This document shows positions 4,342-61,062 of a DNA stretch of 64,000 nt, piece by piece; the stretch's first letter is position 1, and each line of letters opens with the position of its first letter. The position numbers and the translations under genes are program-made. The stretch lies in the IMG/VR virus record IMGVR_UViG_3300043464_002284, positions 124,001 to 188,000 of that record; one strand, 5' to 3'. The notes under the pieces are model-generated. The model worked only from the letters and a program-made list of their open reading frames with translations, had not been told where the DNA came from and searched no databases.

Positions 4342-4547
4342 TATAGGTTTCCTCTAGTAATTCTAATGAGTTGTATTTCATTAAAATATACCCCAAAATA
4401 AGCATAATAAGCTTAAAACTTTATGCTATTCTAAAAAAGTAAGTATAATTTTATATATACACTATTTGTTTTTTTAAAAAGAAGATTTGACCTGAGACGC
4501 CGACGAGTTACAATAAAAATGTTATGTCACCAATCCTGGAGAAAATC

Positions 4548-4859
4548 ATGAAAAACCTACTATGTTCTTTAATGCTATTATTTATGCTGGCTAACTTAGC
4601 TTCTGCTCAATATCCAGTAGTTACTCAAGCATGGGTTCCTATGATGGTTAATACAACCCAATATGTTCCTTACAATTATGCTGTAACTAATTACTATACT
4701 ACTATGGTTCCGGTTAATGTTCCAACGGTTCAATACTATCAAGCTCCATTGTATCGACCAGTATCTGAGGTAACTCCTTATGCTCAAACTTACTTTCCTT
4801 CATGTCGTTGGAATAGACCAACTTATTACAACTATCAGTATTATCCTTATCGGTATTGA
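4548..4859 (+). CDS. Small secreted Tyr/Pro-rich protein (planctomycete-like)
   Basis: Signal peptide MKNLLCSLMLLFMLANLASA; GGAG RBS; Y/P/V-rich low-complexity body. Confidence 0.6.
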   Translation: MKNLLCSLMLLFMLANLASAQYPVVTQAWVPMMVNTTQYVPYNYAVTNYYTTMVPVNVPTVQYYQAPLYRPVSEVTPYAQTYFPSCRWNRPTYYNYQYYPYRY

Positions 4860-4865
4860 AAAACT

Positions 4866-6677
4866 ATGTGTGGTATAGTTGCTTACAAAGGCAAGCAGAA
4901 ATGCTTGTCTTTTTTGCTTGATGGACTTCAAGCTCTGGAATATAGAGGTTATGATAGTGCGGGCGTATGCTATTTGGTGAACCAAACTTTAATAAATGTC
5001 AAACAGACTGGTAGCGTTGAAGATTTAAAAAAGGCCGTTAAAAACCCCGATATCGAAGCCTACAGCGGTATTGGCCACACAAGATGGGCAACACACGGAA
5101 AGCCCTGCAAAAGAAATTCTCATCCTCATCTGACCAGTGACAATAAATTGGCCATAATCCACAATGGCATTATTGAAAATTACCAAGAGTTAAAGGATAG
5201 TCTGGAAAAAAAGTATAAATTCAAAAGCGACACTGATTCTGAGGTGCTGTTGTATCAAATATATGAATTTGTGCAGGAAGGAAAGGATATTTTAACGAGC
5301 GTCAAATGCGCTCTTAGGAAAATTGTCGGGGCCTTTGCTATAGTGGTAATGGGGGAAAGCGGTCAAATGATAGTGGCTCGAAAGGGAAGTCCTTTGGTGA
5401 TAGGATTGGGGGTAAATGAAATAATGGTAGGGAGTGATAGTGGGGCTTTTGGCGATAGGGCAAGTTTGGGGCTTGTATATTTAAAAGATAATAGTGTAGG
5501 GGAAATTACGGATAAGCTAACGGTATATGATTTGCATAACAATATAGAAACTGATTATGAAATTGAGCAGGTATATAATAATAGTTTGAGGGTGGAAAAG
5601 GGATCTTATGACAGTTTCATGCTTAAAGAGATTTTTGAGCAACCAAGAGTGATTGATGATTGTTTGAGGGGGCGACTTGATGGATATCGCATTAAATTGG
5701 GGGGATTGATTGGCTATGAGAATATATTTAAAAAGGCAAAGCATATAACCATAGTGAGTTGTGGGTCAAGTTGGCATTCTTCTTTGATTGCAAAATATTA
5801 TATTGAGGAATTTTGTAAGATTAAAGTTAGTGTAGAGTATGCTAGTGAGTTCCGATATCGAAAGCCATGTATTGAGAAGGGGGATATTGTTATTGGGGTT
5901 AGTCAAAGTGGGGAAACCGCAGATACTATTAGTGCTTTAGAAATAGCAAAAATATATGGGGCGATTATTGTGGGGATTTGTAATGTTCCTAATTCTACCA
6001 TAGCAAGAATGAGTGATTGCGGAATTTATTTACGGGCGGGTGTGGAAGTGGGGGTGGCTAGTACTAAGGCTTTTACTAATCAGGTGGTGGTTTTGTTGAT
6101 GTTAAGTTTGTGGATTGAGCAGAATGTTGGGATTATGGGTTTGGATCACAGAAAAAGAATAATAGATGATTTGAGGGAGTTGCCGGATTTGACTGAGCAA
6201 TGTTTGAGGTGCTATGAGAACGTGGAGTTTTTAGCAGAGAGTATGGTTGGTATGACTAATTGCTTGTTTTTGGGGCGTGGATATAATTTTCCAATAGCTC
6301 TTGAGGGGGCTCTTAAGTTAAAAGAGATAAGTTATGTTCATGCTGAGGGATATCCTGCGGCAGAAATGAAACATGGGCCTATTGCTTTGATAGATAAAAA
6401 TATGCCGGTGATTGTTCTTGCTAATAATCTGGGGCAGTATGGAAAGATGGTAAATAATGTTAGTGAAATAATAGCACGAGATGGTAAGGTGATAAGCATA
6501 TTTTCTGAAAATGCTGGGTTGGGAGATTATAAAATAAGGGTTCCTGTGGTATCTGATGCTTTGAGTCCGTTGATGGGAATAGTTCCTTTGCAGTTATTTT
6601 CTTACTACTCGGCAGTTTTGAGGGGCAAAAATGTTGATAAGCCAAGGAATTTAGCTAAAAGCGTTACTGTCGAATAA
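4866..6677 (+). CDS. glmS: Glutamine--fructose-6-phosphate aminotransferase (isomerizing)
   Basis: MCGIV N-terminal Cys, LEYRGYDSAG, GHTRWATHG, HNGIIENY, SQSGETADT, LKLKEISY, KPRNLAKSVTVE. Confidence 0.98.
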   Translation: MCGIVAYKGKQKCLSFLLDGLQALEYRGYDSAGVCYLVNQTLINVKQTGSVEDLKKAVKNPDIEAYSGIGHTRWATHGKPCKRNSHPHLTSDNKLAIIHNGIIENYQELKDSLEKKYKFKSDTDSEVLLYQIYEFVQEGKDILTSVKCALRKIVGAFAIVVMGESGQMIVARKGSPLVIGLGVNEIMVGSDSGAFGDRASLGLVYLKDNSVGEITDKLTVYDLHNNIETDYEIEQVYNNSLRVEKGSYDSFMLKEIFEQPRVIDDCLRGRLDGYRIKLGGLIGYENIFKKAKHITIVSCGSSWHSSLIAKYYIEEFCKIKVSVEYASEFRYRKPCIEKGDIVIGVSQSGETADTISALEIAKIYGAIIVGICNVPNSTIARMSDCGIYLRAGVEVGVASTKAFTNQVVVLLMLSLWIEQNVGIMGLDHRKRIIDDLRELPDLTEQCLRCYENVEFLAESMVGMTNCLFLGRGYNFPIALEGALKLKEISYVHAEGYPAAEMKHGPIALIDKNMPVIVLANNLGQYGKMVNNVSEIIARDGKVISIFSENAGLGDYKIRVPVVSDALSPLMGIVPLQLFSYYSAVLRGKNVDKPRNLAKSVTVE

Positions 6678-6774
6678 TTAAATTTTCTATTGATTTTTCA
6701 AATTCTTCTACTAAGATTCGTAAAGGTGTAGGAACGCACGATTTAATCCTTTCTCTATTTAGGTAGGACACCAA

Positions 6775-8385
6775 ATGAAAAAAGCATGGAAGTTAACTGG
6801 TCCAGAGTCTCTAGAAAATAAAACATTATTATCAATAACTCCTAATGATCCTAAATTTAACGATCAATGGGGTTTGCAAAGTATATCGGTCCAACAAGCA
6901 TGGCAATATGGCACAGGATCTAAGGATATTGTTGTTGCTGTAATTGATAGTGGTATTGATTTAACTAATCAAGATTTAAAGAATAATTTATGGGTTAATC
7001 CTGGAGAGATAGCAGGCGACGGAATAGATAATGAGAACAATGGATATATAGACGATGTTAATGGGTGGAATTTTGCCAATAATAATAATGATGTTCAGGA
7101 CCGATACGGACATGGAACTCATGTGGCTGGCATAATTGGTGCAGAAGGGGATAATGGTTTGGGGGTCACGGGGATTAATTGGAATGTAAGTTTGATGGCT
7201 TTAAAGTTTATGGATGATAAGGGTGTGGGTGATACCGGTGGAGCTATACGAGCCATGGATTATATAGGTATGATGAAGAATACTTATGGAGTAAATGTGG
7301 TGGTGGCTAATGCTAGTTGGGGAGGTCTTACTGGTTTTAGTAATATGTTATATGGGGCTATTAATAGATTGAATGATGTTGGGGTGGTGCTGACTGTGGC
7401 TGCTGGTAATAGTGGTAGCGATAATGATATTACTCTTAGATATCCTAGCTGTTATGATAGCGATAATATAATTAGTGTGGGAGCTTTGAGTAAATATGAT
7501 GGGGTGAGTTTGGTTGGCTTTTCTAATTATGGAGCGTCCACTGTGGATCTTGCTGCTCCTGGTAGCATGATACTATCTACGATTCCATATAATAATTATG
7601 GATACTTGAGCGGAACCAGTATGGCGGCTCCTATGGTTGCTGGAGCGGTTGCCTTATTGAAGTCTATTAAGTCTAGTCTAACTGTATCAGAAGTTAAAGC
7701 TGCTATTTTTGGATCAGTAGATAAAATTCCGGAACTATTTGGAAAGGTGGCAACAGGAGGAAAGTTGAACGTGGGGGCAGCCATGGCTAATGTATTGGGG
7801 GTTCCTTATGACGGAAACATATTACCAACAGGAGCCATAACGAGTCAGAATTTAAGAAATATTAGTGGATGGGCCAAAGATCTTAACTTTCCAAACTCTA
7901 GTATTCATGTGAGACTAATAATAGATGGTGCAGATAGCGGGTTGGTATGGACTGGGGTTGGTGGGTCATTTGTTTTTAATCTGGGTGGTCTGACAATAGG
8001 GGAGCATGTTATAAGCGTTGAGGCTAGAGACTCTCAAACAGGATCTTGGACCTCTGTAGCATCATCTAAAGTTACTATTCCTCCTCCGATTGTTAGAGTG
8101 GGATATCTAAGATTAGATAGAGTTGCTGGATGGGCTTTTAGTGAAAGATCAGGAGCTTCTCCGGTTCTTGTTAGAGTAGTTATTAATGGAAGAATAGTAT
8201 CTGGTCGGTGGGCTAACTTGTATAGACCAGCGCTAATTCCGGTGGTTGGTAGCTCCAGACACGGATTTAATATTCCGTTGAATAGAAACTGGTTTCATAA
8301 AGGAGCTAATAACATGACGATTCAAGTTTATGATCCAATATCGAAGCAGGTTTCAATAGCTTGGGAGAGAACCATAAATAAATAA
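6775..8385 (+). CDS. Subtilisin-like S8 serine peptidase with C-terminal Ig-like domains
   Basis: Catalytic triad motifs VAVIDSG, HGTHVAG, GTSMAAP; oxyanion AAGN. Confidence 0.95.
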   Translation: MKKAWKLTGPESLENKTLLSITPNDPKFNDQWGLQSISVQQAWQYGTGSKDIVVAVIDSGIDLTNQDLKNNLWVNPGEIAGDGIDNENNGYIDDVNGWNFANNNNDVQDRYGHGTHVAGIIGAEGDNGLGVTGINWNVSLMALKFMDDKGVGDTGGAIRAMDYIGMMKNTYGVNVVVANASWGGLTGFSNMLYGAINRLNDVGVVLTVAAGNSGSDNDITLRYPSCYDSDNIISVGALSKYDGVSLVGFSNYGASTVDLAAPGSMILSTIPYNNYGYLSGTSMAAPMVAGAVALLKSIKSSLTVSEVKAAIFGSVDKIPELFGKVATGGKLNVGAAMANVLGVPYDGNILPTGAITSQNLRNISGWAKDLNFPNSSIHVRLIIDGADSGLVWTGVGGSFVFNLGGLTIGEHVISVEARDSQTGSWTSVASSKVTIPPPIVRVGYLRLDRVAGWAFSERSGASPVLVRVVINGRIVSGRWANLYRPALIPVVGSSRHGFNIPLNRNWFHKGANNMTIQVYDPISKQVSIAWERTINK

Positions 8386-8496: not shown

Positions 8497-8575
8497 TAAG
8501 TCTATATCCCATAAGGACTTATGACGAGTATCGGATGCCCGTATTTGACGTAAGTCCTTTGTTGTAAGGTACTTA
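8497..8575. repeat. Double-palindrome element 1 (period 54)
   Basis: Palindromes start at 8497 and 8551. Confidence 0.85.
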
Positions 8576-8614
8576 GGCAAGTCTGCGAGTCTGGCATGAC
8601 ATTTGCTGCTCAAA

Positions 8615-8632
8615 CCTTACGAAAATGTAAGG
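8615..8632. promoter_or_regulatory. CCTTAC-N6-GTAAGG palindrome upstream of -35 boxes (also at 9039, 10200, 12369, 14500)
   Basis: Five copies, each about 11-22 bp upstream of a TTGCAA/TTGACR hexamer. Confidence 0.7.
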
Positions 8633-8643
8633 AAATTTTCTGC

Positions 8644-8678
8644 TTGCAAGCAAAGTTTGGGTTGGTATAATGTCGATA
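8644..8678 (+). promoter_or_regulatory. Sigma70-type promoter with GTCGATA right after the -10
   Basis: TTGCAA-16-TATAAT-GTCGATA; same layout at 9068, 11253, 14528. Confidence 0.7.
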
Positions 8679-8710
8679 TGAAGAATAAGAGAAAGAAAAG
8701 AGGAAAAAAG

Positions 8711-9037
8711 ATGGAAAATCTGAATTACGATCTGGTTTCTGACTGCTGTGGTGCTGGTTGTGCTTTTGAGACCGGTGAGGGTAAGGATAAAATCGGGATT
8801 TGCATGGATTGCAAGGAATGGTGTGGTGTGGTAGAAGATATTCCGGAAGATGAGGATATGGTGAAAGCATTGAAAGATAATTCCATGACGATGGAAGAAT
8901 ATGATAGCCTGCCCGATTACATCCCCGGTCTTGACGACGGAGAGGGTTGGGACCCCATTATGGGGGATGCTGAAGATCATATCGAAACGGATGATCAGTG
9001 GCTCGACGATTTCTGTGGCGAAGAGGATTTTGCCTGA
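8711..9037 (+). CDS. Acidic hypothetical protein with CC/CxxC motifs
   Basis: SDCCGA...CMDCKEWC then D/E-rich tail; promoter and RBS upstream. Confidence 0.7.
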   Translation: MENLNYDLVSDCCGAGCAFETGEGKDKIGICMDCKEWCGVVEDIPEDEDMVKALKDNSMTMEEYDSLPDYIPGLDDGEGWDPIMGDAEDHIETDDQWLDDFCGEEDFA

Positions 9038-9132
9038 ACCTTACGAAATTGTAAGGAAACTTTCCGCTTGCAACCTACAGAATACTCTGTATAATGTCGA
9101 TATAAGAACAAGAGAACGATAAAGAAAAGGGA

Positions 9133-9381
9133 ATGAAAATGATCACCATCAACAATCGCGACGAACTGAACAACCTCCTCTATGGTGCTGATTCGACCAG
9201 CCCCGAAACTTTGGTTGGAATCGCTCGTATCGGCGGCGAGTTGCTCGCTGAGGCTTTCCACTATTACGAACTGAGCGACGGGACCGCTTCCATCGGAGAT
9301 TTCTTTCCCTGCGGCGATGAGGGTGAGGGGATCAATGTTGATCGCGACGGAAACATTCTTAGCGATTTTCTCTACTACTGA
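9133..9381 (+). CDS. Acidic hypothetical protein
   Basis: Promoter and RBS upstream. Confidence 0.65.
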   Translation: MKMITINNRDELNNLLYGADSTSPETLVGIARIGGELLAEAFHYYELSDGTASIGDFFPCGDEGEGINVDRDGNILSDFLYY

Positions 9382-9412
9382 ACAATGTACAGTAGTGTAC
9401 AATGATTCGACG

Positions 9413-9490
9413 TAAAGCCTTATGCTATAAGGACTTACGACAAATCCGGCCCGCCCCTTTTGACGTAACTCCTTGATGCGTATATACTTA
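9413..9490. repeat. Double-palindrome element 2 (core inverted)
   Basis: Starts 9413/9466; core CCGGCCCGCCCC. Confidence 0.9.
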
Positions 9491-10117
9491 CAGCAAATAT
9501 AAAAAATATTATGTTTGGCATGAAATTATATTTCAAAAATCCAAAGATTTCCCTTGCAACGGTCGATACATACTGTATAATGAAAGCACAAGAGAACGAT
9601 AGGACAAAGGAAAAGAAAATGACCAACGTATCTTTCGACATGGTGATGGCTGGCGTTCGACAGGTGTTCGGCAAGGAATCGTATCGTGTTCGGGTCGTCC
9701 ACTCTGGTGCATATACGAAAGTCGAATCGAAGGATATGTTTCACTCTGTAACGATCAAGTCGAATGAGACGATCATGGAAAAGCTGAATGAGCTGTTCTA
9801 TGATGTGGTGTGTGAGGATTGTGCGTCGGGCATCTAGGCTTGACAACACCATAGCGTATACGGTATAATAGAACCAACACAAGAAAGAAAAGGAAAAAGA
9901 TGTTTCAGACCAACTATAAAACTGTGACGAATAACCTTGACAAGCTTTTCTCTGCTATGCGAGCTGGTAAGTATCACTGCGTGCTCGACCCAAGGGGTAA
10001 CGCTCATGTGGGCCTTATCAATGGTATCATGCGTGAAGATGGTAGCGGAAAGAATTGGATCGTAATAGTGACCAACCGTACAGTAAGCGAAAAGGTCTTC
10101 ATTCACGCCTCATGACC

Positions 10118-10195: not shown

Positions 10196-10237
10196 TGAAC
10201 CTTACGATATTGTAAGGAAGAAAACTATTGCTAGAGC

Positions 10238-10266
10238 TTGACGTTGGTCGATAATAGGTGTAGAAT
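10238..10266 (+). promoter_or_regulatory. Sigma70-type promoter with CGATA spacer motif
   Basis: TTGACG-TTGGTCGATAATAGGTG-TAGAAT. Confidence 0.8.
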
Positions 10267-11163: not shown

Positions 11164-11871
11164 CGACAACTTAGCAAATACTATGCCAATATCAAAGAAA
11201 ATGACGAAAAGTTTTGTCAAATTCTCTTGACATAAAAATATCCGGATTTCTCTTGAAAGCTCAAGATGAGCATGGTATAATGTCGATATAAGAGATAGAG
11301 AAGAAAGAAAGAGAGAGTTGAGATGGAAAAAGTTACGAGTGTGAATGGTTTCATTGCTTCGCTTCCCAAGATTCGGAAGCGTAAGATTTGGAGTGTGACG
11401 ATTGACGGAAAGATTGTTCAAGGCGTGAGTGCTGACGACAATCGTAAGGAAACTGCTGAAGCGTATATCGCCAGCAAGTATCCTGGTCAAGCTTTCACTC
11501 TCAAGTTTGTTGAGTGGAGAATCTGACCCCCATTAGAGGGGATTGACAAGCACAAAAACTTTGATAGAATACCAGAAAGAGAAAGAGAGAAAAGAATGTA
11601 CGAGATTGGCGACAGTGTGATGCTCAAGGGATTCGAGAAACAGATTGTTGGAAAGATTGTTTCCTACCACTATGATGAGGGAAATGTGTGGACGGTTAGG
11701 ATGCCCGGTGGGCAGCAATGGGATTTTGGCGACCATGAGCTTTCGCCCGCGGTTGATGCCTACGGACAACCCTGGACTTATCGACCCACCCATAGTGGGG
11801 GTTGATAGGCAAAAGAATTGTTGATAGAATCCACACACAAGAGAACGATAGACCTTAGAGAGAAAAAGAAA

Positions 11872-12252: not shown

Positions 12253-12287
12253 ACGCACACTACTGCACAAAGACATAGCAGTTGACC

Positions 12288-12365: not shown

Positions 12366-12692
12366 CAACCTTACAACATTGTAAGGAAACTTTTCCTGCT
12401 CTAACCTGTTGACATTGGACGATAATAGAGGTATAATCGTAAGACAAGAGGGAGAGAATAAAGATGAAAGATATGAACACTCGTACAATGCAAGACATTC
12501 TGAGGAATACCCAGATCAAGCTGGAAACTTGCACAATTCCCGAAGTAAGGGATGGCTATAAGCTGCTGATCAGGCACCTTGCTAGTGAACTTCTGTTTAG
12601 GTATCGTCTAGCCAAATAGCCTAAAGTTTTGCATGGTAGAATGTCGATAATAGGTATAGGGAAAACGAGAACTAACAACAAAGAGGAAAAGT

Positions 12693-13350: not shown

Positions 13351-13414
13351 CGTCAACTGCAAAATTTTTTCTATTTGGCACGGAATTATATTCTGGAATT
13401 TTCCAAGTTACTGC

Positions 13415-13443
13415 TTGACACTGGCCGATAATAAGAGTATAAT
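13415..13443 (+). promoter_or_regulatory. Consensus sigma70 promoter with GCCGATA spacer motif
   Basis: TTGACA-CTGGCCGATAATAAGAG-TATAAT. Confidence 0.85.
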
Positions 13444-14493: not shown

Positions 14494-14921
14494 CGACAAC
14501 CTTACGGTATTGCAAGGAGACATCCACTTGACATCTAAAGTTTCTCTGCTATACTTGTCGATATAAGAGATAGAGAAAGAGAGAGTGAAGAATGAGTAGG
14601 TATTACGAAGGTCGTTTCAACCCGTACAATCGTCATGATACGGGAATGTATGTGGTCTATCGCAAGAGCGACAACAAGCACCTTGGAACGGTTGTGGATT
14701 GTCGTAGTGAGAGCGAAGCCAAGCGCAAGGCTGGCTATGAGTTTGGTTGTGAGTGCTATGTGAGTGAAATTGAGGAATAAAATGAAAACGAAAAAGAAAG
14801 AGTTGACAGCACACCAGAAAGCTGTTATACTCATGAATCGTGAAGCTAGTCGTGCAGTGAATCGTGTGAAGATGTTGGAACAGTTGTATCTTGAAACCAT
14901 GAAAGCAAAGGAACTTGTTAA

Positions 14922-15249: not shown

Positions 15250-15330
15250 TGACGAAAGAGAATTTCTTACCGAATCTATTGACAATAGCCGATACTCCTG
15301 TAGAATGACTCAACCAAAGGAGGACAAGCT

Positions 15331-15955: not shown

Positions 15956-16035
15956 CGAAAACCTTGCAATACTGAAAGATTCAAGTTCGCCCCTTGCATT
16001 TGCCGATAATATATGGTAGAATGAAGAGACGAGAA

Positions 16036-16120: not shown

Positions 16121-16223
16121 ATATCGTAAAATTTTTCTAAAGTTTCCGCTTGACAAATGTCGATAATTAGTGTAGACTTGTGGTATGGATGTTGTGATCG
16201 GTTTTCAATTTGAAAGGGTTTCT

Positions 16224-16742: not shown

Positions 16743-16826
16743 CGACAATTCTTTTTTGTTGAAGTTTTCCCTATTGACAAGCCGATAATAGTAGTGTAGA
16801 ATACAGGGAATCAAAAGGAGAAAAAG

Positions 16827-17617: not shown

Positions 17618-17658
17618 TGTAAATGCTAAAAAATTTTTGGAATTCCTACAGAAGCCTC

Positions 17659-17687
17659 TTGACAAGTGACGATAATAGATGTATACT
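17659..17687 (+). promoter_or_regulatory. Sigma70 promoter upstream of the ncRNA cluster
   Basis: TTGACA-AGTGACGATAATAGATG-TATACT. Confidence 0.85.
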
Positions 17688-19328: not shown

Positions 19329-19408
19329 CGATTAGCAATATTTTTTCAAGATTTCCTCTTGACTTGTCGATAATAGTAGTGTAAGATAGTGGTAACACGA
19401 AAGGGAAT

Positions 19409-20583: not shown

Positions 20584-20786
20584 GGACAAAATCAAAAATC
20601 TTTGAGGCCCACTCAAGTTCCTGCTTGACAATGACGATACTATACTGTAGAATGAGAGTATCACAAGTCAAGACTCCGCGATGATGCCAACAAGAAAAAC
20701 CATCACGACGGACTTGACAAGTGGGTAACAGTAACGTATACTGATACTAGAACGATTGGAAACTGTAACATTTTTGGAGAAATGAA

Positions 20787-21580: not shown

Positions 21581-21660
21581 CATCAAGAATAATTTTGTGA
21601 AGTTTTTCGCTTGACGTTGCCGATACTATAGTGTAGAATCGGTAGACACAGGAGAAGAAC

Positions 21661-22446: not shown

Positions 22447-22529
22447 GAGATTATTCAAGTTTCACTATTGCATTTGTCGATAAGATACTGTAGAATGGTG
22501 GAGTATCACCAACTTGGAAAGGGAAAGCT

Positions 22530-23577: not shown

Positions 23578-23615
23578 GAGAAATTCCAGAAAACTCCTAA
23601 AGTTTAGGGTGGTGA

Positions 23616-24029
23616 TTGGTCGATAATAAGGATATGAGAACGAGACGAGAATCAACAAGGGGTGAGAGAATGATCCAGTGGGTTGGGATTGTGATTACGA
23701 TTTTGGGTCTGGCGTATACGGGTGTGAAGGACTACCAGAAAGGGGACATAAAATTTCCCAAGATGCCTCAAAAACAGGTCTTGACAAAGGTAGTTTATCC
23801 GATACAATACTGTCTGATGGCTTACGATCCTAACATTGATAGAATTTTTTACCTACACGAAAATGGAATATGGTATGATTACGCTCCACAACAACGACGA
23901 TATTCGACCACGCCGCAACCATATCAAGCTCAAGGTGCGACCGCAGTGGCAGGTTCCTACGGGTCACAAGGAACACCGGCATACCGTTATGGACAATCGC
24001 CCCAAGCGTCAGCGAACCCGATCCGCTGA
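23616..24029 (+). CDS. Membrane-anchored hypothetical protein
   Basis: TM helix WVGIVITILGLAY. Confidence 0.55.
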   Translation: MVDNKDMRTRRESTRGERMIQWVGIVITILGLAYTGVKDYQKGDIKFPKMPQKQVLTKVVYPIQYCLMAYDPNIDRIFYLHENGIWYDYAPQQRRYSTTPQPYQAQGATAVAGSYGSQGTPAYRYGQSPQASANPIR

Positions 24030-25149: not shown

Positions 25150-25234
25150 GGATTTGTTTAAAGTTTGTTCTTGACAGCTGCCGATAACTAGTGTATGATT
25201 GCTAATCGGAGGCTGATGTTTGAGTTGCGAGTGC

Positions 25235-25357: not shown

Positions 25358-25613
25358 AATTTCTAAACATTTGCCTCTTGACAAGCCGATAATGGTATGG
25401 TAGACTATTGGAATAAGAAAGGAACCTAAGATGAAGAACCTTCGCATCTATGATATTGTGACCGAGGACGGTCAAACCCTGGCTGACATTCAACTCTCTA
25501 TGCAAGAGGATTTTGATTGGGCTGATGTTTTTGATAAGCTCTATGATTTTACCACAGAAAACGTCCAAAGTTATTCCTACCAAGAAATTACCGTACAAAC
25601 TGAATAACTAGAT

Positions 25614-26565: not shown

Positions 26566-26667
26566 CGACCTGCGGAATTTTTCCAAGGTTTTCGCTTGAC
26601 AGTGACGATAACATAGTGTAGAATCAGCGTATAAGAACGATTGAACAGCAACACGAAAGGGATGATT

Positions 26668-28397: not shown

Positions 28398-29031
28398 ATA
28401 TTACAAAACAAGAAGCCTGGAAACTAATAGATGCTATCAAGGCATATATGAAGGACTATACTGTTACGGGAGCAGTTCATAAAACGTTCGACAATATTAC
28501 TAAAAAACTAAAGGAGGTTGTCAAAGAATAGTAACTGGTGGTGAGAGACCGGTTAGTATTGTAAGTTGTTTGTTCTCAAGGCTTTGCGTCAACAGAGCCG
28601 ATATGGTATACTAGGACGGTGGCGTGAGTGGTCAACTTTTCTCTTTCTAAGGAATTCTTATGCTAGGCCTAATCTTTGGTAGTTGTGTTGTTTTTGGACT
28701 TATCCAAGGTTTTAGCAGCAAGTAAGATTTTATGAATAATAATCAGACTATTCGGGTCGTTACCATACAAATGGAATTGGCTATACCAAATGATGATTGT
28801 ACTTGTCTAGATAGAGATGACATCTGCAATTATCTAAATAATAAACTGTATGAGGACCCTGAATTTTTTGGTGAGTTTGGCCCTGAGAATATTGTAAAGG
28901 TAGCCTCACTAGAATCATAGATACTATCTATTGTAGTATACCCTTCTCTAACTTCTTAACTCTTATTTATCATACGCACCTGCATAATACATATTCTTTT
29001 CTCTGGGGTGTGTCAAGAAATAAAAATCTTA

Positions 29032-31227: not shown

Positions 31228-34018
31228 TTTATCATGTTAAAACATACTATAATCAATATTGATAATAAGTGTCTTGATCTATTGTTAACAGAAGAAGAAA
31301 TTCAAGGTGCTTTTGCCCGAGCTTTAGATCATAATAATGCTCAATATATTAACCAAAATATTTGCTGCAAATGCTGGCCCATAGATAGTAATAAGGAATG
31401 TTGTCCGTTCTGGAAAAAGATTTTTGGACTATGTGAAAGTTGTCAAGAAAATCCCCCAGAGTCAAAGGAGAACTGTGATGGCTAAGAAAAAAGCCTGTAA
31501 GAAAACTTGTGGGAAAAAATGTAGCAAGAAAAAGTGCGACCAAGTTCCACAAGAAAATCAAGATACTGGATTTGAAGTTAAGCCGTTAACAAAGGCAGAT
31601 TATTTTTTTGGAATGATTAAGAAAGCCTTTGGTTATGAATGAGATATTCAGCAACTTAGGATTTTTATTGATGAGTTTGATTCTGGTAGAGTCTATAGTA
31701 TATATTACAGGACTATGGTTCGTCTCCTATCTGTCAAGGAAAGATGACGATGACTCAAATAATTTCCATAGTTAGTCGGCCAATTTGCCCCACCTTCATT
31801 CATGATGACATAACCAGAATATTCATTTCCCTCATAGGATTACTAGTCCTCTCTGCCATCTTTTACCAAATAGTTAGATATTATGGTCGTTGAAAATAAT
31901 AATCTCATTATATATGGCCCACATATCATTCTTTCCTGCATCATAGTTAGATCACTGCTGATCTGGTATTTAGAGCATTTTTTATATGAGGACTATAATG
32001 AGTAAAATTTCAAGAAATGATGATTTTCATGTTCCTTTCATTAAGAATCTAGCTTTTGTGGGGCTAGTTACTATAGTTTCTATGATTACTACTCACTTTT
32101 TAGTAGTAAATTATCTTCCAAAACTTATTCAAACCCAAGAATATACCATTCAGCAATCCCAGATTCAGCCCAAGTAGGTCTTTCTTTAGCTAATACGACC
32201 TATTTAACGGCTAAAAGAATTAATATTCACTTATTATCTTATCTCGTGGTGAAATTTGAGTAAAGTCTATTCTCTGATAGGGTGAATTATACCATATCGG
32301 CCTAAAGTTGTCAAGCCCTCATTGTCGATACTTGACAGAGAGGAAACTATGATGTATACTGGTACTACTGATAGGGGTAGAAAACTTAATTTGGGGCTGA
32401 AAAAGATGTATAAACAGATTCAATTGACTGATAAGGAACTAGAACTTTTAGCCTCTATGATCCGGTATTATATTGGTGAAAAGAAGGACAAACCGGGCTT
32501 TGAAATCAATAATGCTCACATTATGTTACGTCACATTAGTGGGGTAAATGCCCGTAAAGGTAGTAATCAAATAGTCTTTAGTGGGAAATGAACCCATTCC
32601 ATTTATCAAATGAAAAAGAAATCAAAACAAATGAAAATCAATGATTATATGTCGCTCGTTGCTGACTATATTGAGAATGAGTATGGGCCAGATGACGATT
32701 TTAAGGAATTAACTATGGACGAAAAATATGCAGTTAAAATGATGCTGGCATTTCATTACCAAGAAAATAATAGTATCAATAATGCGGCTAGTGATGTTAT
32801 TAGTTATATTCGTGACAATAGAGAATGGATGAGGGAGAATATCAAATGAGTAGTATTGTAATCAAAGATAGTTATAAGGCTGATGTTTTCAATTTCGATA
32901 TGGAATGTTGGAAACAAGAAATTCCTAATGAGATACTGTTTAATGAAGATGGAACAGTCAAGGACGGGCCTTGTACTAAATGGGCTGAACTATATAATCT
33001 GACTATTAATAATGTGATCAGTTGGGAATGGACTAAGATGAAGTTGACAAGAAATGAACTCAAAGGTTTGGCCGATTTTCTTAACCAATTTTTGGAGGAC
33101 AACCCATGAACGATAAACTGAAAAGTAATATCAGGAACTTTATTGTGGATTATGATAATACTGTGAGTGATTTTAATATGGCTGATTATGATTTGTGGCT
33201 TGAGACTGCCGTTAATCTTTTGAAAGAAGTTTTGGAGAATAAATAATGACTAAACCCACAATCCTTACAGACAAAGAAATTGAGGCGATTAAGGAATCCA
33301 TGAGACAAATATGGGAGAGCGACTGCATTTCCATAGAGGATGCACAAGAAGTAAATACCATTCTCAATAATCTACTTGAAAGGACAAAGGAAAACTAATG
33401 GTAATTCAAAAAACTTGGACAGACCTTTTGGGCAAGCCTCAAGGTAATGAGAGTGTTGATGGTAATGATATTGTGAGGGAAGTTAGTCTTCATCAATTTA
33501 GAATATTGTGGTCATTTAATAGTAATCAAGAAGCTAATCGGATTTATACTTATTGGACAACTATGGAGAATAACTAATGACTAGATTAAATTTGGATTTG
33601 ACAACTAAACAGATCAATCTTCTATTTGTGGCTTTGGAAAATCTTGAGAAAAGTGATAGGATGGGCGATCCTGAGCGTGCAGATATTATGAAGTTGACGA
33701 GATATTTGGATAGTGTAGTATTTGTTGAGAAATGGTATGTGGAAAACAAATAATGGAAAACGGGACAGTTGTCGTATTTGAACCCAAAAATTTTAATCCA
33801 GAGTTTTGGAACAATCTTCCAGAAAAAGATAGGGCTGAATATTACGGGCCTTTGGGTTATGGATCGGACAAGAAGAAGTTTTTTGTATTTTTGACCGAAA
33901 TTAAAAATGCTCCCGGCCATTGTGTTCTTGTTGATCTTGACGATGGACATATAGAGGTTATGCGTCATGTTTCTGATTTTAGAGAAGTTAATGAAGAAGA
34001 ATTTTAGGAGAATAAATA

Positions 34019-36881: not shown

Positions 36882-38435
36882 GAGATTAAGAGTGAGCGAA
36901 ATATATAAAACAGAATATGCTAATCTAGAACTAGACAATACTAGAGTAGGAAAATTTGAATATGAGCTAGGTATTTCTCTGTATAAAAAGAAATTGGTAC
37001 TAATTTTTTCTGAGGAAGAACTTAAGGGCTTTGCTGATTTTATCAATAACTTTTTGGAGAGTAAATCATGAGATGGGTTTTTATTGTGGCTAGAGGATCA
37101 ACCATCGAAAAAATTAAAGTTTTTGATGACTATTTTGTAGGAGAAGCCTATACCAATGAATATCTAAGGATAGGATTTGGAGTAAACGAAGTAGATTTTC
37201 CAGAATATCGCAAAGGGGAATATTATGAAGGAGGAATAAGTGTTGGTCTTTACAAAGACAATGGGTAATTTTGTAAAGTGTCTGTTGACAAACGCCGATA
37301 ACACAGTATACTTGGGTATCCCTTGGAGAAAGTTTATGAGTCCAACAGTTCAACAAAAAGTTCAAAATTTGATTGATAAGTATTTCATTGGTCAGAACAA
37401 CCATGAACTATCTATCAAACAAGATAACCTAGACAAATTCTTGTCGGAATACAACAAGATTATTATTACTCGTACCGTGGAAGTTTGTGGCATACATTAA
37501 TTGGAGAAAAACATGACAGTTCAACAGCTTCGTAATAGTGGATATAAGGTTAGGGTTCTTCACAATCGTCTTTACAACGGCTATTATAAATGGCAAGTAG
37601 GTAGCAAACCTAATCAGAGCGTTCATGGTTATGCTCCTATTGATCCAGATACTAAAGGTGGATCAACCCAAATTATAATTGATGGCCCATCTGGCGATCA
37701 TTATGATGGACTCGCTATTTGTAGTAAGAAAGAGAACTATAATAAAAAACTGGGAGTTAGAATTGCTCTTGGACGTTGTAACATTAAACAGCCAGCATAT
37801 ATTCCAGTCGAGGTAGAAAATGACTAAAGAAGAAAAATTGGAAGAGATTAGGCGAATGTGCTTGGGTATTATGCAAGTTTGGAGTCAAAAGTCTAGTTAT
37901 AATGATCCTTATGAGGATGGAAGAATTGTAGGTCGTTCAACACTAGCAGAAACTATTCTGGAGATTATTAATCATGGCTAAGAGTTTTGAAGATTTGTTG
38001 AAGAAAACTTGTTCTAAAGACGTTATTATTGATGGATATAAGAAAACTATGGACTACTTTGCAGAGTATATTGGAATGTCTCCAAAACAAGCCAACGTAT
38101 TGCCAGATGGTTTTTCAACGGTTAGAATTAAAGGGAAACAATTCAAGAGGCGTGATCCAGCACGAAGATGGTAATGAGAACATATAAAGAAGAATTAAGA
38201 AAAGTTCTTGATGACGTTTCATGTGATGTCTGTGGTAAAAGTACCACTAACTATCCAGATGTTGGGCCAGATTATGCCACTCTTGAATCTTGTTGGGGAT
38301 ATGGCTCAAAGAATGATGGATCAAGATTTGAGGTTGATCTGTGCGAGTCGTGTTTTAATGATGTAATTAATTTACTGAAAGAAAAAAGAAAAAGTGTTTT
38401 GGGGCCATTCGTCTATCCATATTCTCCAGACCCAC

Positions 38436-41693: not shown

Positions 41694-42815
41694 GGAGTTC
41701 CTATTAAAAAGAGGGTACTGCTGCCCCTTGGATGCTTCAACTGCCCTTATAACGAGCAACCAGAGGGCTTGACAAAGGAACCAGAGGACGTTAAACTAGA
41801 AGTGAACGACGAATCATCCACTCAAAAGGAAAAGCAATGAACGAGTCAGTAAATCAAGCTATTTGTGATTTCTATAATAGTGTTTGGAATTATATGAAAG
41901 CTGAATATAAGCCAAAGTGGGCCAGACTTTATAATGCTGAAGATACTTTGGATGAAATGATTCAGATTACTGGACAGTATTATCTTGGCGGGAACAATGT
42001 TGTAGATACTGCCGGAGATATTGTGACTCTTCTTAAAAAGAGAAGCAAGTGACCTACTCTGATTTTAGAAATAAAATTGATCATGATCTTAAAAAGTATG
42101 GTTTAAGGTATGGTCAAACAGTGATGAATACTTTGTCAGAAGTTTGGCCGGAAAAAAATAGAGAATTAACATCAACAGATTGGGACTGTTTCTATAATGA
42201 TAACAAAGCAGACACTCTACTAAATTACTTAGAAAAAATATGGAACCATGAAACAACTTGAAAAGAAAGATCCTCTCTTTGATATAGACAATTATATTAA
42301 TAGCTTAGAAAAGACCATAGAGCAACAGAAATACACAATAGAGTCTCTTAAAAACGAGATTAGAACTCAAAGAAAAGAAATAGGTTCTTTGCGAGAAGAA
42401 CGCGGATCGCTATTAGATCAAGACAAGCCGCCGATGTTTGACCACAACCTATGGATAGAAAATGGAGATAATAATGAAAGATAAGACAGAAGTTTTTGCT
42501 ATTGGTACTGACGTTAAACTGGCTGAAGATGTATTCGGCAAGGTAACAGGGATTAATATTCGTGGAAATAATTCGATCAGCTATGAAATTGGCTGGTGGA
42601 ATGGACGAAGTTATGACTGCAAGAGTTTTGCTGACTATGAAATTGAAAGCACTCTATCTACAACAAAGCAAAGAATTGGTTTTGCTTGAAGTCTTGACAA
42701 GAGAAAACCGATAAGATAGAATGAGGAACTGGATGGATTGGGATTTTACTTGGTTAATCGAACTAACTTTAGTGATTATTGTGTTTTTTGTTTTTGGTTA
42801 TTTTTTAGGGGTTAA

Positions 42816-46070: not shown

Positions 46071-46131
46071 TTCTCAAGTCTGGCTTGACAACTTGACGAT
46101 ACTAGGATATAATCTCAGCACAGGAGACACT

Positions 46132-47993: not shown

Positions 47994-48367
47994 ACCAGAG
48001 TGGATGGAATATTTTGAGAGAGAAGCTCCGTTTTCCTATTACTGTATTATTTGTTTGGGATACTTAGGTAAAATACTATTTTATTTCTCGTATGTTATAC
48101 TCTTGATATTTTTATTTGTTCCTCTTTTCATGATATACTCTGGCACAAAAGCTATTAAAATCAAATTAGTAGAGGATAAAAAGCATAAAAAACTACGCAA
48201 AGAAAAAGAGAAACAAGAACAGCTTCATCAGAACCTATATTTAGATCATCTAGACAGAAATATAAAAAAGAAAAAGAAACACAAATAGTTTCTAAAGTCT
48301 GCCTGTTGACAACTCCGATACTTGTGGTATAAAACATGAGTTGTCACCGTGTCATTTTGGAGAAACT

Positions 48368-50419: not shown

Positions 50420-50520
50420 ATTTTGAAAAAATCTCAGAACCACTAAAGAATCCCTCTTGACAGTGCCGATAATTGAGTTATACTTAGGATGTAACGTCAA
50501 CAAACACAGGAGAAAAGAAA

Positions 50521-51933: not shown

Positions 51934-52137
51934 TATGTCTCAACAAGAAATACAAGAACTTAAAGAGCAAATACATGACTTAAAGGAATATCTATATTCT
52001 GACTTGTGTAAGGCTTGTGGAGACGCAGCATTAGCTCTAGATAAAATTAGTGAAAGACTAAATCAGCTAGAGTCTCAACAAAATTCCTAAAGGTCTTGAC
52101 AGTGGTTGGTCGATATGATACAATAGAAAAATAACAC

Positions 52138-58480: not shown

Positions 58481-58561
58481 TTCAAGAACCGGGGCTTGAC
58501 AAGACGATAGGACTAGTGTAGAATGTGAGCATACACTTTGGAACCAACCTTTGAGGACATT

Positions 58562-59260: not shown

Positions 59261-60251
59261 TTATGCGGAATGGTAAAGGTTCTAAAAGACGAGAGAGTTT
59301 GGTTTCTCAAGAGACTTGGGATAAAAACTACGAAAGAATTTTTAGAAAGAAAAAAGATGGGAAGCGTAACAAATCTAAAGGAAAATAAAACACTGTTCAT
59401 CCCTTGTTCTTGCAAGAGCGAAATTTTAGTGATCGAATATGATCATGAAATTCAATTGGCTGATTTGGCAATATTTGAACATTACACAAACTATAGTCAT
59501 AAGATGTCATTATGGCAGAGATTAAGGTATTGTTTTAAGGTATTGTTTGAAAAAAAACCATACGCCGATCAGATGGTACTTGACAATAAACAGCTTAAAG
59601 ATTTGCAAAAATTCCTAAATGAACTTAATCTCTAAGGTGTATATTATAGGGTTATCAAACTCATCTTAAGGAGGCTAATCATGGTTGTCAGAACAGCAAC
59701 AGAATACATGAACGATCAGTTAGCTAACAGAGTTAAATCTCTTCAGAAAGCTTTAAATCAAGCTGAAAAAATAATGAATACCCTTGAGATAGAAAATCAA
59801 AGACTAAAAGACGTTCTTGCTAACCTAACGTCAGAAAATAATCAAGGTTATATTCTCAATAGTGAGACCTTTAATGAGCCAGTGCTTACAGTCTAAGAAC
59901 AAGAACAAAAGAATAATAACACAAATTGGCGAATACGAATATTTGATTGAGGGCGAGAGCGATTGGGCGAAATTTGGTTGTCAATCAGATATTTCAATAA
60001 TAACTTCTGCTAACTTAGACGGCGGGCCATTCTTATTGGTTGGTGATTCTTTCTTGGGTAAAGGAAGAATATCCTCAATACTAAATATTGACAGTGGGCG
60101 GGATGGGTATATAATAATTAAGGTTACTCTATACTCACCAAAGGAAACATCATGATTTCAGAACTCATTCCCGTTATCGGTTATCATCAAGCAATGTTAA
60201 TGTCTGGCTATTCAGAATATCAGATTCAACAAATTATTAAAGGATCTACTT

Positions 60252-60437
60252 ATGAACCAATTTCACAAGAGTAATAAGAATAGAGTTTTCTTTGGTGTTT
60301 GTGGAGGACTAGCAGAAAGTCTAGGATTAGATGTTTCTGTAGTTAGGCTGGGATTTGTTGCTGGTGCGATTTTCACCGGAAGTATTCTTTTCTGGGCATA
60401 TTTACTAATGGCTCTGGTTCTTCCAACAGAGGATTGA
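60252..60437 (+). CDS. PspC domain protein
   Basis: NRVFFGVCGGLAESLGLDVSVVRLGFV...AYLLMALVLP. Confidence 0.85.
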   Translation: MNQFHKSNKNRVFFGVCGGLAESLGLDVSVVRLGFVAGAIFTGSILFWAYLLMALVLPTED

Positions 60438-60441
60438 TCTA

Positions 60442-61062
60442 ATGGATAAGATAGTGGGTGGTCAGAAAGTATTTTTTACTGCTGATCTTCACCTTGGACA
60501 TAAGAATATCATAGGATATTGTAATCGTCCATTTTCTACTGGTGGAGAGATGGACGCTAAAATTATTTCTTCTATAAACGAAACAGTTGGACAAAACGAT
60601 ATTCTTTACGTTATAGGAGATTTCTGCCATAAAGGCGGAACGGCTCTATCTTATAGAGAAAGAATAGCTTGCCAAAATGTGCATATTATTCTTGGCAATC
60701 ATGACGAACCAACTAAATTCACTAGCGGATTCTCTAGTGTCTCTGATCAAAAAATGATTCTGTATATCAATCAAAAAATATTCATGTGTCATTATCCTAT
60801 GAGAAGTTGGTCTGGTAGCTATAGAAAAAGTTGGATGCTCTATGGTCATGTTCATGGCAGGCTGCATCGTGAGGACGTTGCTTCTGGAACCCTCACGCTT
60901 GATGTAGGCGTTGATAATAAAAGAGATGGGGTAGGGTTTGGTACTCCTTGGAGTTTTAAAGACGTTCAACAGGAATTTCTGGCGAGAACGAAAAAAAAAT
61001 CAAGGTCGCCCATTGACATTGACGATACCATACTGTATAATCGAAGGAACAACGCGAGGTAA
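60442..61062 (+). CDS. Phage calcineurin-like metallophosphoesterase
   Basis: FFTADLHLGH.NII..C.RPF, GDF, GNHD, CHYP, GHVH, DVGVD. Confidence 0.88.
   Translation: MDKIVGGQKVFFTADLHLGHKNIIGYCNRPFSTGGEMDAKIISSINETVGQNDILYVIGDFCHKGGTALSYRERIACQNVHIILGNHDEPTKFTSGFSSVSDQKMILYINQKIFMCHYPMRSWSGSYRKSWMLYGHVHGRLHREDVASGTLTLDVGVDNKRDGVGFGTPWSFKDVQQEFLARTKKKSRSPIDIDDTILYNRRNNAR

What the first reader, a model, noticed from the sequence alone, without database searches (positions are those of the whole stretch)
4488..61041. Conserved CGATA motif in about 30 sigma70-type promoters, at two alternative positions
Seen: G(C/T/A)CGATA-like sequence in the -35/-10 spacer at 9554, 10238, 12409, 13415, 15279, 15994, 16150, 16774, 17659, 19359, 20625, 21611, 22468, 25171, 25378, 26596, 37285, 42694, 46085, 48306, 50457, 52096, 58496 and 61013. 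In other promoters it lies right after the -10 (8644, 9068, 11253, 14528). Spacer sequence is not normally conserved at sigma70 promoters. Known analogy: the MotA box in T4 middle promoters. Inference: a site for a phage or host factor, or a methylation mark, that lets the phage switch its promoters together.
Basis: partly seen in the sequence, partly recalled or inferred. Interest (0 to 1): 0.6.

Follow-up and report, generated by a model that had tools for sequence, protein, structure and literature searches.

The report
Second, sigma-28-like promoter inside phage promoters
The repeated CGATA is the downstream half of a second two-part promoter-like signal that matches the flagellar sigma-28 consensus with a longer gap, interleaved with about 30 ordinary early promoters of an uncultured lake jumbo phage and found in many of its relatives.

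Summary
All 28 listed sites carry CGATA, and 20 of 61 sigma-70-type promoters in the early region have it in the spacer, against 0.8 expected (p about 8e-23).

CGATA is not a spacer element sitting at two alternative positions. It is the core of G(C/T/A)CGATA(A/C/T). A second box, (C)TAAAGTTT, lies a fixed 13 (sometimes 12) bases upstream of it. The TTGACA/TATAAT promoter slides relative to this pair:
- CGATA 3-5, 6 or 9 nt after the -35
- directly after the -10
- upstream of the -35
- with no sigma-70 promoter at all (win 23598-23626)

Both boxes equal the sigma-28/FliA consensus TAAAGTTT-N11-GCCGATAA, but the spacer is 1-2 bp longer. All roughly 30 sites are on the + strand, only in genome 132.6-191 kb.

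The spacing peak recurs in related uncultured phages: 175 further unique sites after masking the seeded matches.

Most likely this is a second promoter class read by an alternative sigma holoenzyme that competes with the host primary sigma on the same DNA. A diverged 232-aa phage sigma co-occurs with the motif. The host's FliA is the other candidate. The 222-aa phage sigma looks SigA-like at its -35-reading helix. Methylation and a MotA-box-type mechanism are not supported. No transcript data exist.

The parts
8651..8679 (+). bipartite element CAAAGTTT-N13-GTCGATAT; class B (CGATA just after the -10 of the TTGCAA/TATAAT promoter at 8644)
9076..9103 (+). element with weak upstream box (TACAGAAT-N12-GTCGATAT); class B, promoter at 9068
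9542..9569 (+). CAAAGATT-N12-GTCGATAC; class A (flanks the -35 at 9554)
10226..10254 (+). GTCGATAA in spacer of promoter 10238; upstream box poor (4/8)
11261..11289 (+). TCAAGATG-N13-GTCGATAT; class B, promoter at 11253
12397..12425 (+). GACGATAA in spacer of promoter 12409; upstream box absent (2/8)
12622..12650 (+).
13403..13431 (+). CCAAGTTA-N13-GCCGATAA; class A, promoter 13415
14536..14564 (+). TAAAGTTT-N13-GTCGATAT; class B, promoter 14528
15268..15295 (+). GCCGATAC in spacer of promoter 15279; upstream box weak (4/8)
15981..16009 (+). TCAAGTTC-N13-GCCGATAA; class A, TTGCAT promoter 15994
16138..16166 (+). TAAAGTTT-N13-GTCGATAA; class A, promoter 16150 (best-scoring site)
16760..16788 (+). 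TGAAGTTT-N13-GCCGATAA; class A, promoter 16774
17647..17675 (+). GACGATAA in spacer of promoter 17659; upstream box weak
19346..19373 (+). TCAAGATT-N12-GTCGATAA; class A, promoter 19359
20613..20640 (+). TCAAGTTC-N12-GACGATAC; class A, promoter 20625
21598..21626 (+). TGAAGTTT-N13-GCCGATAC; class A, promoter 21611
22455..22483 (+). TCAAGTTT-N13-GTCGATAA; class A, TTGCAT promoter 22468
23598..23626 (+). stand-alone TAAAGTTT-N13-GTCGATAA with no sigma-70-type promoter; follows the usual intergenic hairpin repeat; 45 nt upstream of a small ORF starting at 23671; conserved in many relatives
25159..25187 (+). TAAAGTTT-N13-GCCGATAA; class A, promoter 25171
25364..25392 (+). TAAACATT-N13-GCCGATAA; class A, promoter 25378
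26584..26611 (+). CAAGGTTT-N12-GACGATAA; class A, promoter 26596
28576..28604 (+).
32303..32331 (+). TAAAGTTG-N13-GTCGATAC lying upstream of, and abutting, the TTGACA at 32332 (class C); orthologous site in relative G005
37274..37301 (+). TAAAGTGT-N12-GCCGATAA; class A, promoter 37285
42687..42714 (+). TGAAGTCT-N12-ACCGATAA; CGATA 9 nt after the -35 at 42694
46074..46102 (+). TCAAGTCT-N13-GACGATAC; CGATA 6 nt after the -35 at 46085
48293..48321 (+). TAAAGTCT-N13-TCCGATAC; class A, promoter 48306
50444..50472 (+). TAAAGAAT-N13-GCCGATAA; class A, promoter 50457
52088..52116 (+). TAAAGGTC-N13-GTCGATAT; CGATA 9 nt after the -35 at 52096
58482..58510 (+). TCAAGAAC-N13-GACGATAG; class A, promoter 58496 (weak boxes)
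61000..61028 (+). TCAAGGTC-N13-GACGATAC; class A, promoter 61013
452..1150 (-). 232-aa diverged sigma-like protein (weak Sigma70_r2; short helical C-terminus); candidate phage-encoded reader, because it co-occurs with the motif among relatives

Best explanation
CGATA is the core of the -10-like half of a second, independent bipartite promoter element, (C)TAAAGTTT - 13 (sometimes 12) nt - G(C/T/A)CGATA(A/C/T). Both halves equal the consensus of flagellar sigma-28 (FliA/SigD) promoters, but the gap is 1-2 bp longer. About 30 copies lie on the + strand in the early-gene region of a 238-kb uncultured lake jumbo phage. Nearly all are interleaved with a sigma-70-type TTGACA-17-TA(G/T)AAT promoter, so two holoenzyme forms would compete for the same roughly 60 bp and start transcripts about 13-15 nt apart. 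Shown: the element, its fixed internal spacing, its variable register relative to the sigma-70 promoter, its stand-alone copies, and its recurrence in related phages. Inferred: that an alternative sigma holoenzyme reads it as a promoter. My split is about 45% a phage-encoded sigma (the 232-aa protein at win 452-1150 is the better candidate), about 35% the host's own FliA-type sigma, and the rest other factors. The likely function is to keep or shift expression of the early-region genes when the primary-sigma holoenzyme is no longer available or has been replaced.
For: Internal phasing:
- Anchored on CGATA, positions -24 to -17 read cT.AAG.T and position -2 is G in 26 of 28 sites. Anchored on the -35 the upstream box blurs.
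- Genome-wide, T.AAG-N18-CGATA occurs 18 times on the + strand against about 1 at other spacings and 0 on the - strand.
- A PWM scan finds 30 sites, all on +, all at 132.6-191.1 kb, against 0-1 in reversed-sequence controls.
- The box-to-CGATA gap is 13 (13 sites) or 12 (4 sites), while the -35-to-CGATA offset ranges from -33 to +31.

Independence from the sigma-70 promoter:
- Four registers exist, plus a stand-alone copy sitting in the usual hairpin-then-promoter slot upstream of an ORF.

Match to the published FliA consensus TAAAGTTT-n11-GCCGATAA (PMC2859248; PMC7286023).

Replication in other phages:
- With the seeded matches masked, related phage loci hold 121 (N18) and 54 (N17) further unique sites against about 6 at other spacings. 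Loci with no detectable homology hold 26 and 16 against about 5.
- In 153 such sites G at -2 is present in 134, and 47 have no TTGAC nearby.
- The complete relative G005 has 15+5 sites on one strand, in the same classes.

Reader:
- The motif is present in all 4 genomes or fragments that carry a homologue of the 232-aa sigma (G000, G005, G001, G004). It is at background in 3 genomes that carry only the 222-aa sigma (G006, G007, G008).
- N13 spacing was 0 of 28 exact FliA-consensus matches in 401 Gammaproteobacteria genomes, where N11 gave about 19 and N12 about 7. This argues for a reader with a different geometry from canonical FliA.
Against: - No transcript 5' ends are available: no RNA run holds this phage. 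Promoter function is therefore inferred.
- No phage ORF resembles FliA. A FliA HMM gives only E 4e-5 on region 4 of the 222-aa sigma.
- The 222-aa sigma has a SigA-type -35 recognition helix (V-S/T-R-E-A-V/I-R-Q), not the FliA type (V-S-E-S-R-V-S-Q).
- The 232-aa protein is only weakly sigma-like: Pfam r2 at 23 bits, AF2 pLDDT 69, Foldseek E >= 0.07. It is close in size to a region-2-only late sigma, and it could instead read the (T)GGTGTAT(A/T) motif found outside the early region.
- The co-occurrence rests on effectively one phylogenetic split.
- The spacer is 2 bp longer than any sigma-28 spacing I could document, which also weakens the host-FliA version.
- The host is unknown.
Confidence: 0.6

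Rival explanations
1. The bipartite element is an operator for a phage or host DNA-binding regulator, not a sigma. This could be a repressor that shuts off the overlapping sigma-70 early promoters, or an activator or appropriator in the manner of T4 MotA. It would bind two unlike half-sites about two helical turns apart.
For: The element overlaps the sigma-70 promoter in nearly every copy, in any register, which is what promoter occlusion needs. The box centres are 21 bp apart, so they lie on the same helix face. One recurrent bacterial hit of the composite pattern turned out to be an operator-type promoter between a TetR-family gene and an RND efflux operon in Desulfobacterales.
Against: The two boxes are neither direct nor inverted repeats of each other. 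Both equal the two halves of a known sigma consensus. All copies are co-oriented with the downstream gene. Stand-alone copies occupy promoter slots with no sigma-70 promoter to regulate: win 23598-23626, and 47 of 153 sites in relatives. The Desulfobacterales sequence is a near-palindrome, unlike the phage element.
Confidence: 0.18
2. The boxes are extra contacts of the same primary-sigma holoenzyme, with TAAAGTTT as a UP-like element for alpha-CTD and GCCGATAA as a spacer element. That would make a single unusually elaborate sigma-70-type promoter typical of the unknown host.
For: In distant relatives the arrangement is very regular: TAAAGTTT-n4/5-TTGACA-n2/3-GCCGATAA-n5/6-TATAAT. Sigma-70 can sense spacer sequence (PMC3130263, listed).
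Against: The pair keeps its own spacing while shifting by -6 to +31 nt relative to the -35. Class B and class C sites and stand-alone copies cannot be UP or spacer elements. Related phage G006 has strong TTGACA-16-TATAAT early promoters without the boxes.
Confidence: 0.05
3. The similarity is inherited, not selected. On this view the promoters are copies of one promoter-plus-hairpin cassette spread by duplication or recombination, like the mobile early-promoter/stem-loop cassettes of T4-type phages, and CGATA merely rides along.
For: Intergenic regions share further repeats (a hairpin element and CCTTACG...GTAAGG) upstream of the promoters. The four class B sites also share downstream leader sequence.
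Against: Positions between the boxes carry little information, apart from the interleaved TTGACA where one is present. The boxes persist with diverged spacers at orthologous sites in phages of 25-80% protein identity. The register varies while the internal spacing is kept.
Confidence: 0.05
4. CGATA is a DNA-modification or restriction-related mark.
For: None beyond the repetition of a short word.
Against: The sites show strict strand bias and need a partner box. CGATA elsewhere in the genome is not above a reversed-sequence control: 239/190 against 284/309. No N6/N4 or Dam-type methyltransferase domain was found in the genome.
Confidence: 0.02

Closest known systems
Sigma-28 (FliA / SigD / WhiG) dependent promoters, consensus TAAAGTTT-N11-GCCGATAA
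   Same: Both boxes match the consensus: -35 (c)TAAAGTTT and extended -10 G(C/T)CGATA(A). The element is bipartite, asymmetric and co-oriented with the downstream gene.
   Different: The spacer is 13 (or 12), not 11 (or 12). N13 gave 0 of 28 exact matches in 401 Gammaproteobacteria genomes. The element drives phage early-region genes, not flagellar genes. It is systematically interleaved with sigma-70-type promoters. No FliA homologue is encoded by the phage, and the host is unknown.
Phage-encoded sigma factors with their own promoter classes (SPO1 gp28 and gp33/34; phiEco32/7-11 ECF-like gp36; T4 gp55)
   Same: The phage carries two diverged sigma-family genes and at least three promoter classes: sigma-70-type early, this element, and a (T)GGTGTAT(A/T) class outside the early region. 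Genes can carry promoters of two classes, as in SPO1 and T4.
   Different: The consensus is not that of any of those phage sigmas (from my knowledge of their published consensuses). The elements are interleaved base-for-base with the early promoter rather than placed in tandem.
   Same: A phage-specific extra motif near -30 at many promoters of pre-replicative genes.
   Different: The MotA box replaces the -35 and sits at a fixed distance from a sigma-70 -10. Here the -35 is retained, the register varies, a second box is required, and stand-alone copies lack any sigma-70 -10.
ECF-type promoters (-35 ..AAC, 16-17 nt, -10 CGT..)
   Same: A two-box layout with a CG-initial -10 and an A-rich -35, about 17-18 nt from the end of AAG to CGA. 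JGI labels some homologues of the 232-aa protein 'sigma24 family'.
   Different: The -35 reads AAAG(TTT), not AAC, and the -10 reads CGATA, not CGT(C/A). The gap is 1-2 nt longer.

Membership tests
sigma-28/FliA-dependent promoter | -35 element TAAAGTTT (TAAA core) | tested here: met
   CGATA-anchored profile reads cT.AAG.T. Six of 32 sites are exact TAAAGTTT, and the consensus cTaAAGtt holds in 153 sites of relatives. Consensus taken from PMC2859248.
sigma-28/FliA-dependent promoter | extended -10 element GCCGATAA | tested here: met
   G at -2 in 26/28 and 134/153 sites. C or T at -1, CGATA invariant by selection, then A/T/C.
sigma-28/FliA-dependent promoter | 11-nt (occasionally 12-nt) gap between the two 8-mers | tested here: not met
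   The gap is 13 (about 70-75% of sites) or 12, with no excess at 11. In 401 Gammaproteobacteria genomes N11 gave about 19, N12 about 7 and N13 0.
sigma-28/FliA-dependent promoter | transcription by FliA-containing RNA polymerase | not testable with these tools
   The host is unknown and no RNA runs exist. The phage encodes no FliA-like ORF and no FlgM.
T4-type MotA-dependent middle promoter | box centred near -30 that replaces the -35, at a fixed distance from a sigma-70 -10 | tested here: not met
   TTGACA is retained. CGATA lies 3-9 nt after the -35, after the -10, or upstream of the -35. Stand-alone copies have no sigma-70 -10.
T4-type MotA-dependent middle promoter | MotA and AsiA homologues in the phage | not tested
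   No specific search was made. The genome is not T4-like (DnaE-type split polymerase, DnaB-type helicase).
ECF-sigma promoter | -35 AAC and -10 CGT separated by 16-17 nt | tested here: inconclusive
   Here the layout is AAG-17/18-CGA. The layout is similar but the key bases differ. The 232-aa protein hits ECF/sigma-B region 2 only weakly.
DNA methylation or restriction motif | cognate methyltransferase present and motif used on both strands genome-wide | tested here: not met
   No PF01555 or PF02086 match. Sites number 18 on + and 0 on -, and are confined to one 60-kb region. C5-methyltransferase families were not searched.
Mobile early-promoter/stem-loop cassettes of T4-type phages | repeated early promoter with an adjoining conserved stem-loop between small early genes | tested here: inconclusive
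   Conserved hairpin repeats precede most promoters. Mobility and a role in recombination were not tested.

The most novel reading that the evidence does not exclude
A large, abundant lineage of uncultured aquatic jumbo phages encodes a minimal, highly diverged sigma that uses the sigma-28 promoter consensus with a spacer 2 bp longer. That spacing would insulate its regulon from the host's flagellar regulon. Its promoters are interleaved base-for-base with sigma-70 early promoters, so each early promoter becomes a sigma-competition switch.
Probability: 0.3. Interest if true: 0.8.

Novelty: new variant of a known kind. Interest (0 to 1): 0.62.

Why it matters
If the element is a promoter, it defines a previously undescribed promoter class for a very large family of uncultured lake and marine phages. 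Each of the two sigma-like proteins has more than 1,300 homologue clusters at 90% identity.

- If the host FliA reads it, early genes would be wired to the host's motility state, and the motif becomes a clue to the host.
- If a phage sigma reads it, the same consensus with a different spacing would be a natural example of insulating a regulon by spacer length.

The systematic interleaving of two promoter types on one stretch of DNA is also a compact design for handing genes from one holoenzyme to another. It can be tested directly in vitro.

I found no paper in the searchable library describing TAAAGTTT/GCCGATAA-type promoters in phage genomes. Subscription literature was not covered.

Tried and rejected
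- **Named relatives:** none found by DNA or protein search.
- **Host identification failed:** GlmS is nearest to Cytophagales at only 51%. That clashes with the strong Shine-Dalgarno use and TTGACA promoters. Cluster names were uninformative.
- **Genome-contig scan with the composite pattern:** returned mostly chance hits and mis-binned phage contigs. The recurrent Desulfobacterales hit is a near-palindromic operator-type promoter between a TetR-family gene and an RND efflux operon, unrelated to the phage element.
- **RNA evidence:** 24 lake or freshwater DNA runs hold the phage and none is RNA.
- **222-aa sigma as reader, disfavoured:** it has a SigA-type recognition helix, it is present in three genomes without the motif, and its fold is that of a generic sigma.
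- **Cryptic FliA or FlgM in the phage:** none found.
- **Sigma homologues in four distant motif-bearing contigs:** uninformative, because they are 10-27% fragments.
- **Protein atlas look-up of the 232-aa protein:** added nothing.
- **Late-type motif GGTGTAT:** not significant by whole-genome counts but clearly enriched in intergenic regions.

Full report
**What the window is.** The window is bases 124,001-188,000 of a 237,915-bp IMG/VR virus record. GC is 38% and the + strand is strongly purine-rich. The "direct terminal repeat" is only 225 bp. The genome encodes tail, baseplate and portal-like proteins, giant ORFs of up to 6,560 aa, ribonucleotide reductase, a DnaB-type helicase and a split DnaE-type polymerase. 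The window itself holds GlmS, a ligase and 12 tRNAs. It has no close named relative. Its DNA is found in 24 lake-water or freshwater metagenome runs from 24 studies, and none is RNA. Genes use clear Shine-Dalgarno sites. The host is unknown.

**Checking the observation.** Every coordinate in the finding is the first base of a TTGNNN -35 hexamer. Each is followed by CGATA in the spacer (24 sites) or two bases after the -10 (4 sites).
- CGATA is over-represented in the window: 159 against 95.8 +/- 9.4.
- Sigma-70-type promoters are concentrated on the + strand of genome 130-190 kb: 59 there, against about 2-3 per 10 kb elsewhere.
- Of 61 such promoters, 20 carry CGATA in the spacer against 0.8 expected (p = 7.8e-23). 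CGATA is the commonest spacer 5-mer.

**What the motif really is.** With a constant 17-nt spacer, CGATA starts 3, 4 or 5 nt after the -35, and in outliers 6 or 9 nt. A contact of the same sigma would not float like that.

Aligning on CGATA instead of on the -35 reveals a second conserved block, cT.AAG.T, at -24 to -17, and a G at -2 in 26 of 28 sites. Aligned on the -35, this upstream block blurs.
- Genome-wide, T.AAG-N18-CGATA occurs 18 times on the + strand against about 1 at any other spacing, and 0 times on the - strand.
- A two-block weight-matrix scan finds 30 sites, all on the + strand, all between 132.6 and 191.1 kb. Reversed-sequence controls give 0-1.
- The element is therefore (C)TAAAGTTT - 13 nt (sometimes 12) - G(C/T/A)CGATA(A/C/T).

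Their TAAAG box lies inside the spacer of the sigma-70-type promoter.

Further registers exist:
- The element at win 32303-32331 ends just before a TTGACA.
- The element at win 12622-12650 follows a -10 whose -35 has decayed here but is TTGACA in relatives.
- The element at win 23598-23626 has no sigma-70-type promoter at all. It sits in the usual slot after the intergenic hairpin repeat and 45 nt before a small ORF.

The "two alternative positions" are thus a by-product. Two independent bipartite signals are superimposed in different registers.

**Identity of the signal.** Both boxes equal the published consensus of sigma-28 (FliA) promoters, TAAAGTTT-n11-GCCGATAA (PMC2859248; PMC7286023). 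The one mismatch is the gap, which is 13 (or 12) instead of 11. As a check I counted exact TAAAGTTT-N(10-14)-GCCGATAA matches in 401 Gammaproteobacteria genomes. This gave about 19 at N11, about 7 at N12, one each at N10 and N14, and none at N13. The phage sites show no excess at N11.

**Recurrence elsewhere.** Of the 136 matches, 59 had TTGAC between the boxes. Most of these contigs are relatives, with 50-80% protein identity in the homologous early region. Others are distant.

I then masked the seeded matches so that the search pattern could not create the result.
- Related loci still contain 121 unique T.AAG-N18-CGATA and 54 N17 sites, against about 6 at other spacings.
- Loci with no detectable homology contain 26 and 16, against about 5.
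- In 153 such sites G at -2 is present in 134.
- TTGAC lies mostly 9-11 nt upstream of CGATA, but also 31 nt upstream or 6-12 nt downstream. It is absent in 47.

The complete relative G005 (186.5 kb) has 15+5 sites on one strand, including the same register classes and an orthologous copy of the win-32303 site with a diverged spacer. The boxes and their spacing are therefore under selection. The sequence between them is not, apart from the interleaved TTGACA where one is present.

**Who reads it.** The phage has two sigma-family genes.

*The 222-aa (probably 196-aa) protein at genome 221.9 kb.*
- It has a strong region 4 and a confident sigma fold, with pLDDT 94.
- Its family profile matches region 3.2-4 of primary sigmas better than FliA: 3e-13 against 1e-8.
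- Its -35 recognition helix reads V-S/T-R-E-A-V/I-R-Q. This is like SigA/RpoD (V-T-R-E-R-I-R-Q) and unlike FliA/SigD (V-S-E/T-S-R-V/I-S-Q).
- It is present in three genomes (G006, G007, G008) where the motif is at background.
- It is therefore a poor candidate.

*The 232-aa protein at win 452-1150.*
- It has only a weak region 2 and a short helical C-terminus.
- Its homologues are present in all four motif-bearing genomes or fragments examined (G000, G005, G001, G004). They are undetectable, even with a profile, in the three motif-poor ones.
- The same clade also differs in its structural module and in a second motif, (T)GGTGTAT(A/T). That motif precedes replication and structural genes and could equally be this protein's target.

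No cryptic FliA-like ORF and no FlgM exist in the phage. The alternative reader is the host's own FliA-type sigma. The perfect box match speaks for this and the +2 spacer speaks against it. I cannot decide between the two with these tools.

**Mechanism proposed.** Shown: about 30 early-region promoters carry two interleaved promoter-like signals.
- In class A the order is [TAAAGTTT][TTGACA][GnCGATAA][TAGAAT].
- In class B the order is [TTGACA][TAAAGTTT][TAGAAT][GnCGATAA].

Inferred: two holoenzyme forms bind mutually exclusively and start about 13-15 nt apart. The same genes can then be transcribed first by the host primary-sigma enzyme and then, or under other conditions, by the alternative holoenzyme. 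A few genes, such as the ORF at win 23671, depend on the second form alone.

**Rivals.**
- *An operator for a non-sigma regulator* remains possible. It is disfavoured by the lack of any repeat symmetry, the match of both halves to one sigma consensus, the strict co-orientation with genes, and the stand-alone copies.
- *A single elaborate sigma-70 promoter* is excluded by the variable register.
- *Inherited cassette similarity* does not explain conserved boxes with diverged spacers.
- *Methylation* is contradicted by the strand bias and by the absence of N6/N4 or Dam-type methyltransferase domains.

**Novelty.** Full-text searches found the consensus only in flagellar-regulation papers, never in phage genomes. 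I rate this a new variant of a known kind. Phage promoters for alternative sigmas and dual-class promoters are already known. New here are the sigma-28-like consensus, the longer spacer and the systematic interleaving across a large uncultured lineage.

Noticed in passing
window about 8500-27900 (e.g. 11090-11170, 19255-19340, 23500-23560): A 60-70 nt repeat precedes at least 20 promoters: GGACTTAgGG, then a GC-rich core (GCGGGCGGGCCGG or its reverse complement), then CGTAAGTCC-TTAT...ACTTACGAC. The outer arms form a hairpin, and the GC-rich core occurs in both orientations among copies. The 8-mers GACTTACG and CGTAAGTC occur 16 times against 1.7 expected, and related 8-mers (GACGTAAG/CTTACGTC, GACTTACG) are also enriched in relative G005. 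It could be a terminator, a processing site or a small mobile element.
   Followed up: partly
genome outside the early region, e.g. G000:C1 13193, 26722, 30658, 39916, 43364 (+) and 72804, 104551, 109861 (-); in the window at 1344 (-): A third promoter-like motif, (T)GGTGTAT(A/T), is enriched in intergenic regions upstream of replication and structural genes: 12-13 regions against about 1 expected. It is shared with G005 and absent from G006.
   Followed up: partly
window 452-1150 (-): The 232-aa sigma-like protein carries a Cys-rich insertion (C-x2-C ... C ... C ... C, about residues 103-129). The insertion is conserved in the close clade but missing from the roughly 175-aa homologues of distant relatives G001 and G004.
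   Followed up: partly
window 4866-6677 (+) and 6775-8385 (+): The phage encodes a full-length GlmS (glutamine-fructose-6-phosphate aminotransferase). It is conserved at 60-95% in many related contigs, and its nearest cellular homologues are Cytophagales at about 51%. A protease-like ORF lies next to it.
   Followed up: partly
window 21345-25687, 30795, 52138, 61515: Twelve tRNA genes lie in the early region. ARAGORN calls one tRNA-Ile with anticodon TAT and one tRNA-Ser with anticodon ACT. Several sit directly downstream of composite promoters.
   Followed up: no
G000:C1:81201-100883 (-), outside the window: A single open reading frame of 6,560 aa, with neighbours of 2,591, 2,232 and 1,833 aa, lies in the structural module.
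   Followed up: no
L165:2096-2140 and seven other Desulfobacterales loci (L159, L166, L170, L214, L248, L252, L262): A conserved bacterial sequence, TAAAGTTTtcgcTTGACAtagcCGATAAacgtcTATAAT, lies between a TetR/CecR-family gene and an HlyD/AcrB efflux operon. It is a near-palindrome (GTTTTCG ... CGATAAAC) around a -35, probably a repressor operator. It resembles the phage composite only by chance.
   Followed up: yes
window 36033-36060: TTGACA-AGTG-CGATAAG...TAAACT lies inside the ORF 35795-36253. It has CGATA in the spacer but no upstream TAAAG box. It is either an internal promoter or a chance match.
   Followed up: no
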